Positions 24,355 through 40,005 of a DNA stretch of 64,000 nt are shown here, one piece after another. A model generated the notes under the pieces. The model was not told the origin of the DNA, did no database searches, and worked only from the letters and a program-made list of their open reading frames with translations. This stretch comes from Thecamonas trahens ATCC 50062 (lineage: Eukaryota > Protista > Apusomonadida), in contig NW_013657649.1 in the NCBI RefSeq assembly GCF_000142905.1, forward strand, positions 186,001 to 250,000, given 5' to 3'. The translations under genes and the position numbers were made by a program. The first letter of the stretch is position 1; every line of letters begins with the position of its first letter.

Positions 24355-24437
24355 GCACAAGGGGGGAAACTCGGGGCGCGGCAGTCGCCCGACAAAGTCG
24401 GACGGCTCCCGCCGCGCCCGTCATGGACGCGCTGTGC
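24355..24437 (-). promoter_or_regulatory. SECIS element (type II-like, non-canonical apical GAG) in SELENOS 3' UTR
   Basis: Minus strand reads GCACAG...AUGAC-GGGCGCGGCGG-GAGC-CGUCCGAC-UUU-GUCGGGCG-A-CUGCCGCGCCC-CGAG...UUGUGC: helix I, UGAN/NGAN core, 11-bp helix II and apical ministem, ~180 nt downstream of the stop. Confidence 0.85.
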
Positions 24438-24617
24438 GGACTCACCACGGCGGCGGTGCACAAGCGCATGCATCAGTGTAGAAAACAGGAAGCCCGATGG
24501 CGGGTAGGGACGGTGTACGGCAGCAGAGCTGCACACGGCGACATGCGGATCGGGGCAACGGGGAAAGAGAGAGCGAGAGGCAGAGGCGCCCTCGGAGCAC
24601 ATTGCGGCTCCGAGGGC

Positions 24618-25094
24618 TTATCCTCAGCCGCCACGGCTTGGGCGCTTGCGGGCTGGACGATACGACGGGCCTCCGCCGTGCATACCGAGGGCACCTCCTC
24701 CGCCACCGGTGCCACCCCTTCTGTGGCGGAGAGACGACGGCCCACCGGGCGAGAGCGAGTCTGCCGCCGATGAGCGCGAGGGTGGAGCGGGAGAGGGAGC
24801 GGGCGGCTGGGCCGGACGCTCGGCAGCATCTGCGACGATCTTGTCCTGCAGGGCGTTGTATCGCTCTGCACGGCGGCGATCGAGGTCAGCACGGTACGAT
24901 GGGTCGCGTTCAAAGCGCGGGGCGAGGCCAAGGAGACGGCGGATGGCAGCGCCGAGATGCGACCAGACCACGGCAGCGAGGACCATGGCGGCGAGGAGGA
25001 GCCAGCCGTGCGAGGCAAGGAACTCGGTGGCTGTGGCGACGGGTGAGGCCAGCCATGGCGGCGTGGTGTATGCCAGGCTGGGGCTGGTGGCCAT
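24618..25094 (-). CDS. SELENOS: Selenoprotein S (VIMP), 158 aa, Sec at penultimate position
   Basis: FLASHGW plus a single TM, a charged helix and a Gly/Pro/Arg-rich tail GGGPSYRPARKRPSRGG, then TGA(24626-24624)-GGA-TAA = GGUG*, matching the SelS C-terminus; downstream SECIS. Confidence 0.92.
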
Positions 25095-25099
25095 GGGGG

Positions 25100-25355
25100 A
25101 AGGGGGGGGGGGGTGAGGTGGTGGTGGTGGTGGTGGTGGTGGTGGTGGTGTTTGGTGGTGGTGGTGGTGGTGGTGGTGGTGGTGGTGTTCGGTGGTGGTG
25201 GTGGTGATGGTGGTCGTCGTGTTCGGTGGTGGTGGTGGTCGTCGTCGTGTTCGATGGTGATGGTGGTGGTGGTCGTCGTGTTCGATGGTGGTCGTCGTCG
25301 TGTTCGATGGTGGTCGTCGTCGTGTTCGATGGTGATCGTCGTCGTGTTCGGTGGC
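25100..25355. repeat. Poly-G, (GGT)n and gtcgtcgtgttcgatggtg repeats
   Basis: Visible simple and compound repeats immediately upstream of SELENOS. Confidence 0.85.
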
Positions 25356-38289: not shown

Positions 38290-40005
38290 CTACGGGGCGC
38301 GACGGAGCGGGCTGCCGCCGGTGCTGCGGATCTGGAGGCTGAGCGACGGCGGGACGGTGGCGGAGAGGCTCGCTGCGTCTGCTGATGGAGCGAGGGAGAT
38401 GGCGAGCGTCTTGAGCGAGGGTGCGGCATGAGCCAATGATGCGATGGCGCTGGGCGTAAAGGTGAGGATGCCAGTGAGCTTGAGGTCGCGGAGGGCGCAG
38501 GCCTGTGCAGCAGGCGAGGCCGCCAGGAGGGGGAGGATGGCATCAGTGACGCTTGGGAGCGAGGCAAGCGAGAGCGAGCGGAGCTTGGCCGAGGAGGCTT
38601 GGCCGATGATAGCACTGACGGCGTCATCGTCGAGAGCAACGCATCGGGCGAGGTCCAACCGGACCAGCGCCGGAAAGGCCGAGCCGAGAACGGTAGCGGC
38701 GGCATGACCAAGCTTGTCGCAGCCGGCAAGCGAGAGCTCTCTCAGTGAAGGCCCTAGAGTGCTGGCAAGCTGGGCCACGCCGCCTTCGGTGAGGTGCGAG
38801 ACATCGCTGAGATTGAGCCGCTGCAGCGCCGGCGCGCCGGCGGCAATAAAGGCGAGCGCCTTGTCAGTCAAGTGCTGGCAGGCCGAGAGATTGAGATGGG
38901 TGAGCGCAGCACCGCCGCCGTCAGCGAGTAGCAGCTGCACGCCGCGATCTGTAACGGCGCGGCAGACCGAGGCAGTGAGCGAGGCCAACGACGGCGGGCC
39001 ACCCCACGGCGCGGGCCACTGTGGCGACGGCCGCCACGCATGCTGTAGCGGCGAGAGCGGCGGGGCGATGAGGGTGCTGTCGGCTACCGACATCGCAGAG
39101 GTATCATCACCATAAACAGAGCCGAGCAGCAGGCCCATGTACCGGAACGATCGGTCGGTGGCGCCTGCAGGGTTGATGCGGATCTTGGGCGCGAGCCGGA
39201 CCAGCCGCGGTACCGCAAAGTGCAGCGAGGTGTCGGTGAAGCGAGTATGCGAGAGCAATGCCGTCCACACAGCCTCCAGCTGCGGTGTGGCAATCAGAGC
39301 CTTGCGCCAGGCCCAGCAGACCCGCGAGGCCGGGACAAGGACGGACTCGGGCGGCGATGCGACGAGTACAATCCGCACAAGCAGCGAGGCGGGGAGCGCG
39401 TCCCAAGTGGAAGCAGGTGAGCGCGCAGCATCGTCAGGAGTTAGAGCGGGGGCATGATTAACAGCTGTTGGTGGCACCGGGGGGCTGTCGGCTGCGATGG
39501 AGGCGGGCGGCGGCGACAGCGGCAGCGGCGGCAGCGGGCGCTGGAGGCGGGCAATGCGACGAGAGGCGTCAGCTGGCGGGGGCGGAGGCGAATTTCCCAG
39601 CAACCGCGCAGTGTGCGAAGCGGCTGCCGCGTGTAGGCGCTCTGCGGCCACCGCAGCAGCTCGCTCGGCGTCGAGGGCGACGCGGAGGGTGTGGACCGAG
39701 GCGCGCAGGTCTGTGGCTTCGCGCTCTGCGGCGTCGCGCGCAGCGTGTGCAGCGGCCAGCTCGTCACGAAGAAGCTGCGTGGCGGCAGTAGCGGCAGCTT
39801 GAGTGGCAGCGGCGTCGGCTTGGGCGGCAGCAGCAGCGGCTTGGGCGGCAGCGGCATCAGTGCGAGCCGCTGCGAGAGCCTGAGTGAGGCCGGCGGCGGC
39901 AACCTCGTACTCGTCGAGCTCACTCTCGCAGCGGCGCAGCTCGTCGGTGAGGGCAGCGCATGCGGCGCATGGAGGGGGTGAGGATGAGGATATAGAGGAC
40001 GACAT
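38290..40005 (-). CDS. F-box/LRR protein with N-terminal coiled coil
   Basis: F-box WDALPASLLVRIV...ASRVCWAWR; cysteine-containing LRRs (LTHLNLSACQHLTD, LRELSLAGCDKL, LVRLDLARCVALDD). Confidence 0.85.
   Translation of the reverse strand: MSSSISSSSPPPCAACAALTDELRRCESELDEYEVAAAGLTQALAAARTDAAAAQAAAAAAQADAAATQAAATAATQLLRDELAAAHAARDAAEREATDLRASVHTLRVALDAERAAAVAAERLHAAAASHTARLLGNSPPPPPADASRRIARLQRPLPPLPLSPPPASIAADSPPVPPTAVNHAPALTPDDAARSPASTWDALPASLLVRIVLVASPPESVLVPASRVCWAWRKALIATPQLEAVWTALLSHTRFTDTSLHFAVPRLVRLAPKIRINPAGATDRSFRYMGLLLGSVYGDDTSAMSVADSTLIAPPLSPLQHAWRPSPQWPAPWGGPPSLASLTASVCRAVTDRGVQLLLADGGGAALTHLNLSACQHLTDKALAFIAAGAPALQRLNLSDVSHLTEGGVAQLASTLGPSLRELSLAGCDKLGHAAATVLGSAFPALVRLDLARCVALDDDAVSAIIGQASSAKLRSLSLASLPSVTDAILPLLAASPAAQACALRDLKLTGILTFTPSAIASLAHAAPSLKTLAISLAPSADAASLSATVPPSLSLQIRSTGGSPLRRAP

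What the first reader, a model, noticed from the sequence alone, without database searches (positions are those of the whole stretch)
24355..25094. Hidden selenoprotein S gene with UGA recoding and a SECIS lacking the apical AA
Seen: the ORF track stops at TGA 24626-24624, but the sequence continues GGA TAA, giving ...RPSRGG-U-G*. About 180 nt downstream is AUGAC + 11-bp GC-rich helix + apical ministem + CGAG, closed by a GCACAG/UUGUGC helix. Known: SELENOS ends in GGUG, and eukaryotic SECIS have a UGAN/NGAN kink-turn core with usually AAR 11-13 nt above it. Here that position reads GAG and the 3' core is CGAG. Inference: a lineage-specific SECIS variant that default AA-based searches would miss, so this organism's selenoproteome may be under-counted.
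Basis: partly seen in the sequence, partly recalled or inferred. Interest (0 to 1): 0.8.

Follow-up and report, generated by a model that had tools for sequence, protein, structure and literature searches.

The report
Unannotated SelS-like selenoprotein in Thecamonas
A small membrane-protein gene of the marine flagellate Thecamonas trahens, annotated as ending at UGA, almost certainly reads that UGA as selenocysteine, guided by a 3' RNA hairpin built like the organism's other SECIS elements but lacking the usual apical AA.

Summary
The window is Thecamonas trahens. The gene at 25094-24618 (-) is AMSG_07172, annotated as an uncharacterized protein that stops at the UGA. It reads ...RPSRGG-UGA-GGA-UAA.

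All four homologue groups whose DNA I could read also show GG-UGA, one codon (Gly or Arg), then UAA or UAG. So does the genome's own SelK.

The hairpin at 24437-24355 (-) has the architecture I found in 12 SECIS of bona fide TGA-containing genes of this genome: UGAC, an 11-bp helix, a 4-nt 5' bulge, a ministem, a 1-nt 3' bulge, then CGAG. Covariance models trained only on those SECIS rank it first in the window (27.6 and 25.7 bits, E about 1e-3). A strict descriptor expects about 2e-4 chance hits per 3'UTR.

The bulge reads GAGC where the others read NCA(A). The missing AA is real but specific to this gene: 9 of 12 others keep AA and 3 keep a single A. Rfam SECIS_1 finds none of them.

SelS is the best family assignment, but it stays below Pfam's threshold.

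New here: a strong stem-loop starts 6 nt after the UGA, at the place of the mammalian SelS proximal stem-loop. Three distant homologues (two strongly, one weakly) have one there too.

The scan's index lists this same stretch once more (s1-744738), read in another window or again.

Verdict: a new member of a known kind.

The parts
24627..25094 (-). Coding sequence before the UGA: 156 codons. Short N-terminal segment, one TM helix (about aa 30-51, 25007-24942), a charged helical stretch, a Pro/Ala/Ser linker and a Gly/Arg-rich tail ending RPSRGG.
   Evidence: Equals AMSG_07172 of Thecamonas trahens. Homologues P0002-P0006.
24624..24626 (-). In-frame UGA, proposed Sec codon, penultimate residue.
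   Evidence: The same GG-UGA + one codon + stop layout occurs in L040, L041, L042, L046 and in this genome's SelK.
24618..24623 (-). GGA (Gly) followed by the true stop UAA.
24588..24617 (-). UGA-proximal stem-loop. Perfect 11-bp stem (24617-07 / 24598-88) with an 8-nt loop. It starts right after the UAA, 6 nt after the UGA.
   Evidence: -24.8 kcal/mol, z -5.3, 0 of 200 shuffles as stable. Unique in the genome. Hairpins at the same position in L046 (z -3.6), L040 (z -3.0) and L041 (z -2.4). None in SelK.
24355..24437 (-). Type-II SECIS element: helix I, AUGA/GA core, 11-bp helix II, 5' bulge GAGC, 8-bp ministem with UUU loop, 3' bulge A, CGAG.
   Evidence: Models not trained on it: R2 27.6 bits, E 3.5e-4 in the window; R3 25.7 bits, E 1.1e-3. 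Descriptor statistics.
24405..24408 (-). Apical 5' bulge GAGC, at the place where the genome's other SECIS read NCAA, NCAC or NCAU.
   Evidence: Structural alignment A8. The models skip this part of the candidate by a local end.
24761..24817 (-). 57-nt in-frame GT..AG 'intron' of the public gene model. Probably coding.
   Evidence: P0001 lacks these 19 residues. Its 5' site is GTCCGG, against GTACGT and GTACGC in two introns inferred from the SelK and GPx loci. Homologues keep a linker of similar length. Unsettled without RNA data.

Best explanation
The gene at 25094-24618 (-) of Thecamonas trahens (AMSG_07172) encodes a divergent SelS-like single-pass membrane selenoprotein of 158 residues. 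Its penultimate codon, UGA at 24626-24624, is decoded as selenocysteine, giving the C-terminus GG-Sec-Gly.

Recoding is directed by a type-II SECIS in the 3'UTR (24437-24355), 200 nt downstream. This SECIS has the AUGA/GA kink-turn core that SBP2-type proteins bind. It follows the organism's own SECIS design, except that the apical bulge is GAGC instead of NCAA.

A very stable stem-loop starts 6 nt after the UGA (24617-24588). It probably modulates the competition between termination and Sec insertion, as UGA-adjacent stem-loops do in mammalian SelN and SelS mRNAs.

Shown: the sequence layout, the structural and statistical fit of the SECIS, conservation of the UGA + 1 codon + stop layout in homologues, and the presence of Sec machinery.

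Inferred: actual Sec insertion, the roles of the hairpin and of the GAGC bulge, and the SelS-like cellular role (ER membrane, ERAD).
For: (1)...GGC GGC TGA GGA TAA.

(2): phmmer against 1.84e9 proteins finds four homologue clusters, and every predicted product ends ...GG. Their DNA reads TGA CGT TAA, TGA CGC TAG, TGA CGG TAA and TGA GGT TAG.

(3): the genome's bona fide SelK (Pfam 33.6 bits) ends AGG-TGA-GGA-TAA. It shares 17 identical nt around the UGA with this gene.

(4): 12 SECIS of TGA-containing GPx, DIO-like, Rdx/SelT/SelW, SelK, SelU-like and DsbA-like genes share UGAC, a helix of about 11 bp, a 4-nt bulge, a ministem, a 1-nt bulge and CGA[G/C]. The candidate has every one of these features.

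(5): models R2 and R3, not trained on the candidate, score it 27.6 and 25.7 bits. That is the best hit in the window. Held-out true SECIS score 48-51 bits.

(6): chance expectation is about 2e-4 per UTR.

(7): homologues carry SECIS-like elements 91-128 nt after their UGA.

(8): tRNA-Sec (TCA), SepSecS and SelD are present.

(9) SelS assignment: Pfam SelS is the top hit for 4 of 6 family members (E 1.8e-4 to 0.06; a precomputed weak SelS hit on P0008). The protein-language-model neighbours of two members are SelS clusters (0.90 and 0.92, 189-205 of 256 features).

(10), with PMC6844570: the stem-loop lies at the position of the mammalian SelS proximal stem-loop (nt 3-36 of the 3'UTR).
Against: - There is no experimental or transcript evidence.
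- The apical part of the SECIS does not fit the genome's own model, which costs 15-30 bits. It lacks both the AA and the conserved C-A.
- At whole-genome scale a score of about 27 bits corresponds to E about 0.2. The significance therefore rests on the position.
- Rfam SECIS_1 gives no hit, though it misses every SECIS of this genome.
- SelS membership stays below Pfam's cut-off (17.3 against 29.8 bits).
- A family profile finds no annotated SelS and no SelS chain in the PDB.
- The protein has no Cys that could pair with Sec as in human SelS.
- One homologue (L042) shows no recognisable SECIS in 850 nt.
Confidence: 0.8

Rival explanations
1. The UGA is an ordinary stop. The protein ends at ...RGG as annotated, and the downstream hairpin is an unrelated 3'UTR structure.
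For: This is the public annotation. Rfam SECIS_1 is silent. The apical AA is missing. Truncated mammalian SelS is reported to remain functional (PMC6844570).
Against: Five of five gene lineages use UGA, never UAA or UAG, followed by exactly one codon and then UAA or UAG. The hairpin matches the genome-specific SECIS model. Chance expectation is about 2e-4.
Confidence: 0.05
2. It is a selenoprotein of the wider SelK/SelS-like class but not an orthologue of animal SelS. On this reading it is a separate protist family with convergent architecture: a TM helix plus a Gly-rich tail ending GG-U-G/R.
For: All SelS Pfam hits are below the cut-off and confined to the TM and adjacent helix. The profile search found no annotated SelS and no PDB SelS. 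There is no Cys partner. Three of the four homologue groups end in U-R, as I recall SelK does (GGUGR; recalled, not checked here), rather than U-G.
Against: SelS is the top Pfam family in 4 of 6 members, and SelK never appears. There is no similarity to the genome's own SelK. The embedding neighbours are SelS for two members. The GYNPL/GYSPL motif in P0004-P0006 resembles the human SelS tail, but that is recalled from memory and was not tested. The proximal stem-loop sits as in mammalian SelS. SelS is already reported in prasinophyte algae (PMC2375036).
Confidence: 0.22
3. The SECIS is a weakened element. The GAGC bulge lowers Sec insertion, so most product is the form two residues shorter, and the gene may be drifting towards loss of Sec.
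For: The A conserved at bulge position 3 in 11 of 11 other type-II SECIS, and the AA kept in 8 of those 11, are absent. The homologues' SECIS keep AA. In mammals the AAR motif matters for efficiency (established knowledge; PMC3753652 describes the conserved apical adenines).
Against: Helices, core and flanks are perfectly kept, with 11 of 11 pairs in helix II. Three bona fide selenoenzyme genes of this genome, whose catalytic residue is Sec, also lack the second A. If the top G-C pair opens, the single A of the candidate sits 13 nt above the core, where the first A sits in the SECIS with 10-nt helices.
Confidence: 0.2

Closest known systems
Selenoprotein S (SELENOS/VIMP, Pfam PF06936)
   Same: Size of about 160-190 aa. 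A short N-terminal segment followed by one TM helix that starts with a G-W motif, then a charged helix. A Gly/Arg/Pro-rich disordered tail with Sec as the penultimate residue in GG-U-G. A SECIS in the 3'UTR. A stem-loop right after the stop codon, like the mammalian PSL (PMC6844570). SelS is already known outside animals, in Ostreococcus (PMC2375036).
   Different: Below Pfam's threshold. No Cys to form the selenylsulfide of human SelS. The VCP-interacting motif is not recognisable with confidence. The SECIS lacks AA.
Selenoprotein K (Pfam PF10961)
   Same: A TM helix plus a Gly-rich tail with Sec near the C-terminus. The Thecamonas SelK gene ends with the identical GGC GGC TGA GGA TAA GC.
   Different: No Pfam SelK hit and no BLASTP similarity to the genome's own SelK. 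The protein is longer, with a helical region after the TM. SelK has no UGA-proximal hairpin.
Eukaryotic type-II SECIS element (Rfam RF00031)
   Same: AUGA/GA quartet, helix I, 11-bp helix II, an apical internal bulge plus ministem, and a 3'UTR location about 200 nt after the UGA.
   Different: The bulge is GAGC instead of AAR (or the CC of SelM/SelO). The Rfam model does not score it, nor any other Thecamonas SECIS.
SelS proximal stem-loop (PSL) and the SelN Sec redefinition element (SRE)
   Same: A stable stem-loop next to the Sec-UGA. Here it starts 6 nt after the UGA. The mammalian SelS PSL covers nt 3-36 of the 3'UTR.
   Different: No sequence similarity. Conservation is positional and structural only, and it is strong in 3 of 5 genes. 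In mammals deleting the PSL raised Sec insertion, so the direction of any effect here is unknown.

Membership tests
Eukaryotic SECIS element | Non-Watson-Crick quartet: 5' (A)UGA opposite 3' GA | tested here: met
   AUGAC at 24424-20 faces CGAG at 24373-70 across helix II.
Eukaryotic SECIS element | Helix II of about 9-13 bp above the core, and helix I below an internal loop | tested here: met
   Helix II has 11 bp (one G-U). Helix I has 6 bp. The centroid fold shows both.
Eukaryotic SECIS element | Conserved unpaired AAR (rarely CC) in the apical loop or bulge | tested here: not met
   The bulge is GAGC. In this genome 9 of 12 other SECIS have AA and 3 have a single A.
Eukaryotic SECIS element | Lies in the 3'UTR downstream of an in-frame UGA of a selenoprotein-family gene | tested here: met
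   It lies 200 nt after the UGA, inside the 321-nt gap before the convergent Clp1-like gene.
Eukaryotic SECIS element | Scores with a SECIS covariance model | tested here: inconclusive
   Rfam SECIS_1 gives no hit, but it also gives none for any SECIS of this genome. Genome-specific models give 27.6 and 25.7 bits, E about 1e-3.
Eukaryotic SECIS element | Directs Sec insertion and binds SBP2 | not testable with these tools
   Needs 75Se labelling, a reporter assay or a binding assay.
Selenoprotein S (PF06936) | Pfam gathering score | tested here: not met
   17.3 bits against 29.8. The best family member, P0004, reaches 21.9 bits at E 1.8e-4.
Selenoprotein S (PF06936) | Sec as penultimate residue in a Gly-rich C-terminus (GG-U-G) | tested here: met
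   The same holds in P0004/P0008. The other three homologue groups read U-R.
Selenoprotein S (PF06936) | One N-proximal TM helix, a following helical region and a disordered Gly/Pro/Arg tail | tested here: met
   Read from the sequence and alignment A6. The Pfam match covers the TM and helix. No structure was predicted.
Selenoprotein S (PF06936) | VCP/p97-interacting motif | not testable with these tools
   An R-x5-A-L-x2-K stretch at aa 75-85 resembles the motif as I recall it, but it is not conserved across the family alignment. No usable test was available.
Selenoprotein S (PF06936) | A Cys that forms a selenylsulfide with Sec (Cys174-Sec188 in human SelS; from my own knowledge) | tested here: not met
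   The protein contains no Cys. Only P0003 has one, 5 residues before the UGA.
Selenoprotein K (PF10961) | Pfam match or similarity to the genome's own SelK | tested here: not met
   No SelK hit at E up to 10. The own-genome SelK search did not return this locus. BLASTP against the SelK exons gave E 8.4 and 4.6.

The most novel reading that the evidence does not exclude
In apusomonads only one apical adenine, or none, is needed for SECIS function. SelS-type mRNAs, from protists to mammals, carry an ancient stem-loop 6 nt after the penultimate UGA. This stem-loop is part of the recoding signal when Sec sits one codon before the true stop, and it may compensate for a weak apical motif.
Probability: 0.2. 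Interest if true: 0.6.

Novelty: new member of a known kind. Interest (0 to 1): 0.42.

Why it matters
It corrects a public gene model: AMSG_07172 is truncated at Sec and probably carries a spurious intron. It also places a SelS-like selenoprotein in Apusomonadida, a lineage close to animals and fungi, which fits an ancient eukaryotic origin of SelS.

It shows that a standard SECIS model (Rfam) finds none of at least 13 SECIS elements of this genome. Selenoproteomes of such protists therefore need lineage-trained models. The consensus given here is one: UGAC, a helix of 10-11 bp, an NCAA bulge, a ministem, a 1-nt bulge, then CGA[G/C].

The natural GAGC, CUAC, CCAC and UCAU bulges are ready-made variants for testing what the apical adenines do.

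The positionally conserved UGA-proximal stem-loop offers a comparative handle on the mammalian SelS PSL/SPUR question.

Tried and rejected
- First guess of a trypanosomatid (GC-rich, long ORFs). Rejected (Thecamonas) and by the intron-split genes.
- Rfam cmscan of the 3' region, of the whole genome and of 12 selenoprotein loci found no SECIS_1 hit anywhere. This is uninformative because the true SECIS are missed too.
It served only to align the others.
- The genome-wide search with R2 scored only 150 of about 30,000 first-look candidates, so it is not a census.
- MAFFT alignments of SECIS (A1, A2) misaligned the 3' strands and were not used for models.
- The word-indexed search with the family profile returned only family members plus P0006.
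- PDB searches with the single sequence and with the profile gave only helical or Gly-linker noise.
- Pfam scans of the C-terminal tails alone gave nothing relevant.
- Complex prediction of the Thecamonas Cdc48 N-domain with aa 52-96 gave no verdict, because a control scored nearly as high. It is no evidence either way.
- No SECIS was found for homologue L042.
- A second model hit in the window (38592-38634, 18-19 bits) lacks the GA core and has only a short stem. Rejected as a SECIS.
Exons and the pre-UGA piece were searched separately by reference. The post-UGA piece is a single Gly.

Full report
**What is there.**
On the minus strand an ATG at 25094 opens 156 sense codons that end GGC GGC TGA GGA TAA. 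The UGA is at 24626-24624 and the UAA at 24620-18. A word-indexed protein search identifies the locus as AMSG_07172 of Thecamonas trahens ATCC 50062, an 'uncharacterized protein' of 137 aa that stops at the UGA.

The public model also removes a 57-nt in-frame GT..AG segment (24817-24761). Its 5' site, GTCCGG, differs from GTACGT and GTACGC in two introns I inferred in this genome. Homologues keep a linker of similar length. I therefore think this intron is spurious, but only RNA data can settle it.

**The organism uses selenocysteine.**
The assembly (28.7 Mb) contains:
- a tRNA-Sec of 74 bits with anticodon TCA
- SepSecS
- SelD
- many genes with one in-frame TGA at the catalytic position: four GPx, three deiodinase-like, three Rdx-family (SelT/SelW-like), SelK, a SelU-like and a DsbA-like gene

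**The UGA is conserved as UGA + one codon + stop.**
phmmer against 1.84 billion representatives found four homologue clusters (E 4e-20 to 2e-4), and a profile search added a fifth. All the predicted proteins from the phmmer search end ...GG. The fifth, P0006, ends GRRR, and its DNA was not read.

Where DNA was available the ends read GGA TGA CGT TAA (L040), GGC TGA CGC TAG (L041), GGC TGA CGG TAA (L042) and GGA TGA GGT TAG (L046/L047, Tara marine metagenome).

The genome's own SelK, which passes Pfam's cut-off, ends AGG-TGA-GGA-TAA. It shares 17 identical nucleotides around the UGA with the window gene. Otherwise it shows no similarity to it.

**The SECIS.**
Rfam's SECIS_1 model is silent on the 3' region. 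It is equally silent on the whole genome and on 12 loci of bona fide selenoprotein genes, so that silence carries no weight.

I located the SECIS of those genes with my own scans. They share a tight design:
- [A/C/U]UGAC
- a GC-rich helix II of 10-11 bp
- a 4-nt 5' bulge
- a ministem
- a 1-nt 3' bulge
- the 3' strand of helix II
- CGA[G/C]

The flanks are also conserved. The window hairpin (24437-24355) has all of these features.

A covariance model built from seven of the SECIS (R2) scored two held-out true SECIS at 50.7 and 48.1 bits. It scored the window hairpin at 27.6 bits, E 3.5e-4 in the window, where it is the best hit. A model built from twelve (R3) gave 25.7 bits, E 1.1e-3. Neither model was trained on the candidate.

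At whole-genome scale about 27 bits equals E about 0.2, so the significance rests on position. A strict descriptor (UGAC, at least 9 contiguous pairs, CGA[G/C]) gives about 2e-4 expected hits per 321-nt UTR. In about 340 kb of real sequence it hit only this site and three spots in 3' regions of other selenoprotein genes: two confirmed SECIS and the L015 candidate.

Three homologues carry SECIS-like elements 91-128 nt after their UGA. I found none in L042.

**The missing AA.**
In the structural alignment of the other SECIS the 4-nt bulge reads UCAA (x3), CCAA (x2), GCAA (x2), ACAA, UCAU, CCAC and CUAC. The SelW-like SECIS has a larger GAAAU loop. Position 3 is A in 11 of 11 and position 4 is A in 8 of 11.

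The candidate reads GAGC, and both models skip its apical part by a local end. The absence of AA is therefore real. It is a peculiarity of this gene, not of the lineage, and the homologues' SECIS read ACAA, CAAAG and ACAAAG.

Two observations soften it:
- Three genes whose catalytic residue is Sec also lack the second A.
- If the top G-C pair of helix II opens, the candidate's single A (24407) lies 13 nt above the core. The first A lies there in the SECIS that have 10-nt helices.

**Which family.**
Pfam SelS is the top hit of the window protein (E 0.0048, 17.3 bits against a cut-off of 29.8). It is also the top hit of P0003, P0004 (E 1.8e-4) and P0006, always over the TM helix and the following helix. 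SelK never appears.

Protein-language-model neighbours of two members are SelS clusters (0.90 and 0.92, 189-205 of 256 shared features). Against this, the family profile reached no annotated SelS and no PDB SelS chain, and the protein has no Cys.

SelS outside animals is already known from Ostreococcus (PMC2375036). I file the gene as a divergent SelS-like member with about 0.75 confidence.

**An added feature.**
Immediately after the UAA, 6 nt after the UGA, lies a perfect 11-bp stem with an 8-nt loop (24617-24588; -24.8 kcal/mol, z -5.3, 0 of 200 shuffles). It is unique in the genome.

Hairpins start at the same position in L046 (13 bp, z -3.6) and L040 (8 bp, z -3.0), and less clearly in L041 (z -2.4). 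L042 and SelK have none. The sequences differ; only position and structure are kept.

Mammalian SelS mRNA has a conserved proximal stem-loop at nt 3-36 of its 3'UTR that influences UGA recoding (PMC6844570). The parallel is suggestive, but it is untested here.

**Verdict.**
The selenoprotein and SECIS reading is well supported. The claim of a lineage-wide AA-less SECIS is not. This is a new, mis-annotated member of known kinds, with a natural SECIS variant and a proximal stem-loop that are worth a bench test.

Noticed in passing
window 24588-24617 (-); L046:2035-2072; L040:779-798: A strong stem-loop starts 6 nt after the Sec-UGA in the SelS-like genes of three distant organisms. It sits at the place of the mammalian SelS proximal stem-loop and is absent from Thecamonas SelK.
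   Followed up: partly
L006:1940-1956 and window 24632-24616 (-): The SelK gene and the SelS-like gene share the identical 17 nt GGCGGCTGAGGATAAGC around the Sec codon, although the proteins are otherwise unrelated. Homologues read GGN GGN UGA [C/G]GN UAR G.
   Followed up: partly
whole genome G000; loci L006-L021, L043, L044: Rfam SECIS_1 detects none of at least 13 SECIS of this genome. They follow a tight lineage-specific consensus: UGAC, a 10-11-bp helix, an NCAA bulge, a ministem, a 1-nt bulge, CGA[G/C]. Some cores are CUGA or UUGA instead of AUGA.
   Followed up: yes
L043 (G000:C37:45255-45323, -) and L044 (G000:C5:169855-169925, -): The genome search with model R2 turned up two further selenoprotein genes. 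One is SelU/PRXL2-like with FG-U-QIC. The other is DsbA/FrnE-like with NI-U-PWC. Each has a SECIS.
   Followed up: partly
L015:2717-2807 (+): A possible SECIS of the fourth GPx-like gene: UUGAC, a 10-bp helix, a long apical region beginning CCAU, then CGAC. Only the descriptor found it, not the covariance models.
   Followed up: no
window 24761-24817 (-): The in-frame 57-nt intron of the public model AMSG_07172 has an atypical 5' site (GTCCGG against GTACGY). It removes a linker that homologues retain, so it is probably an annotation artefact.
   Followed up: partly
window 38592-38634 (-): A weak hit of the SECIS models (18-19 bits). It comes from flank similarity (GAUGACG...CCAAGCCUCCU), with a short stem and no GA core. 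Probably chance.
   Followed up: no
window 25100-25300 (-): Long (CCA)n / ACC-rich and poly-C simple repeats lie directly upstream of the start codon.
   Followed up: no
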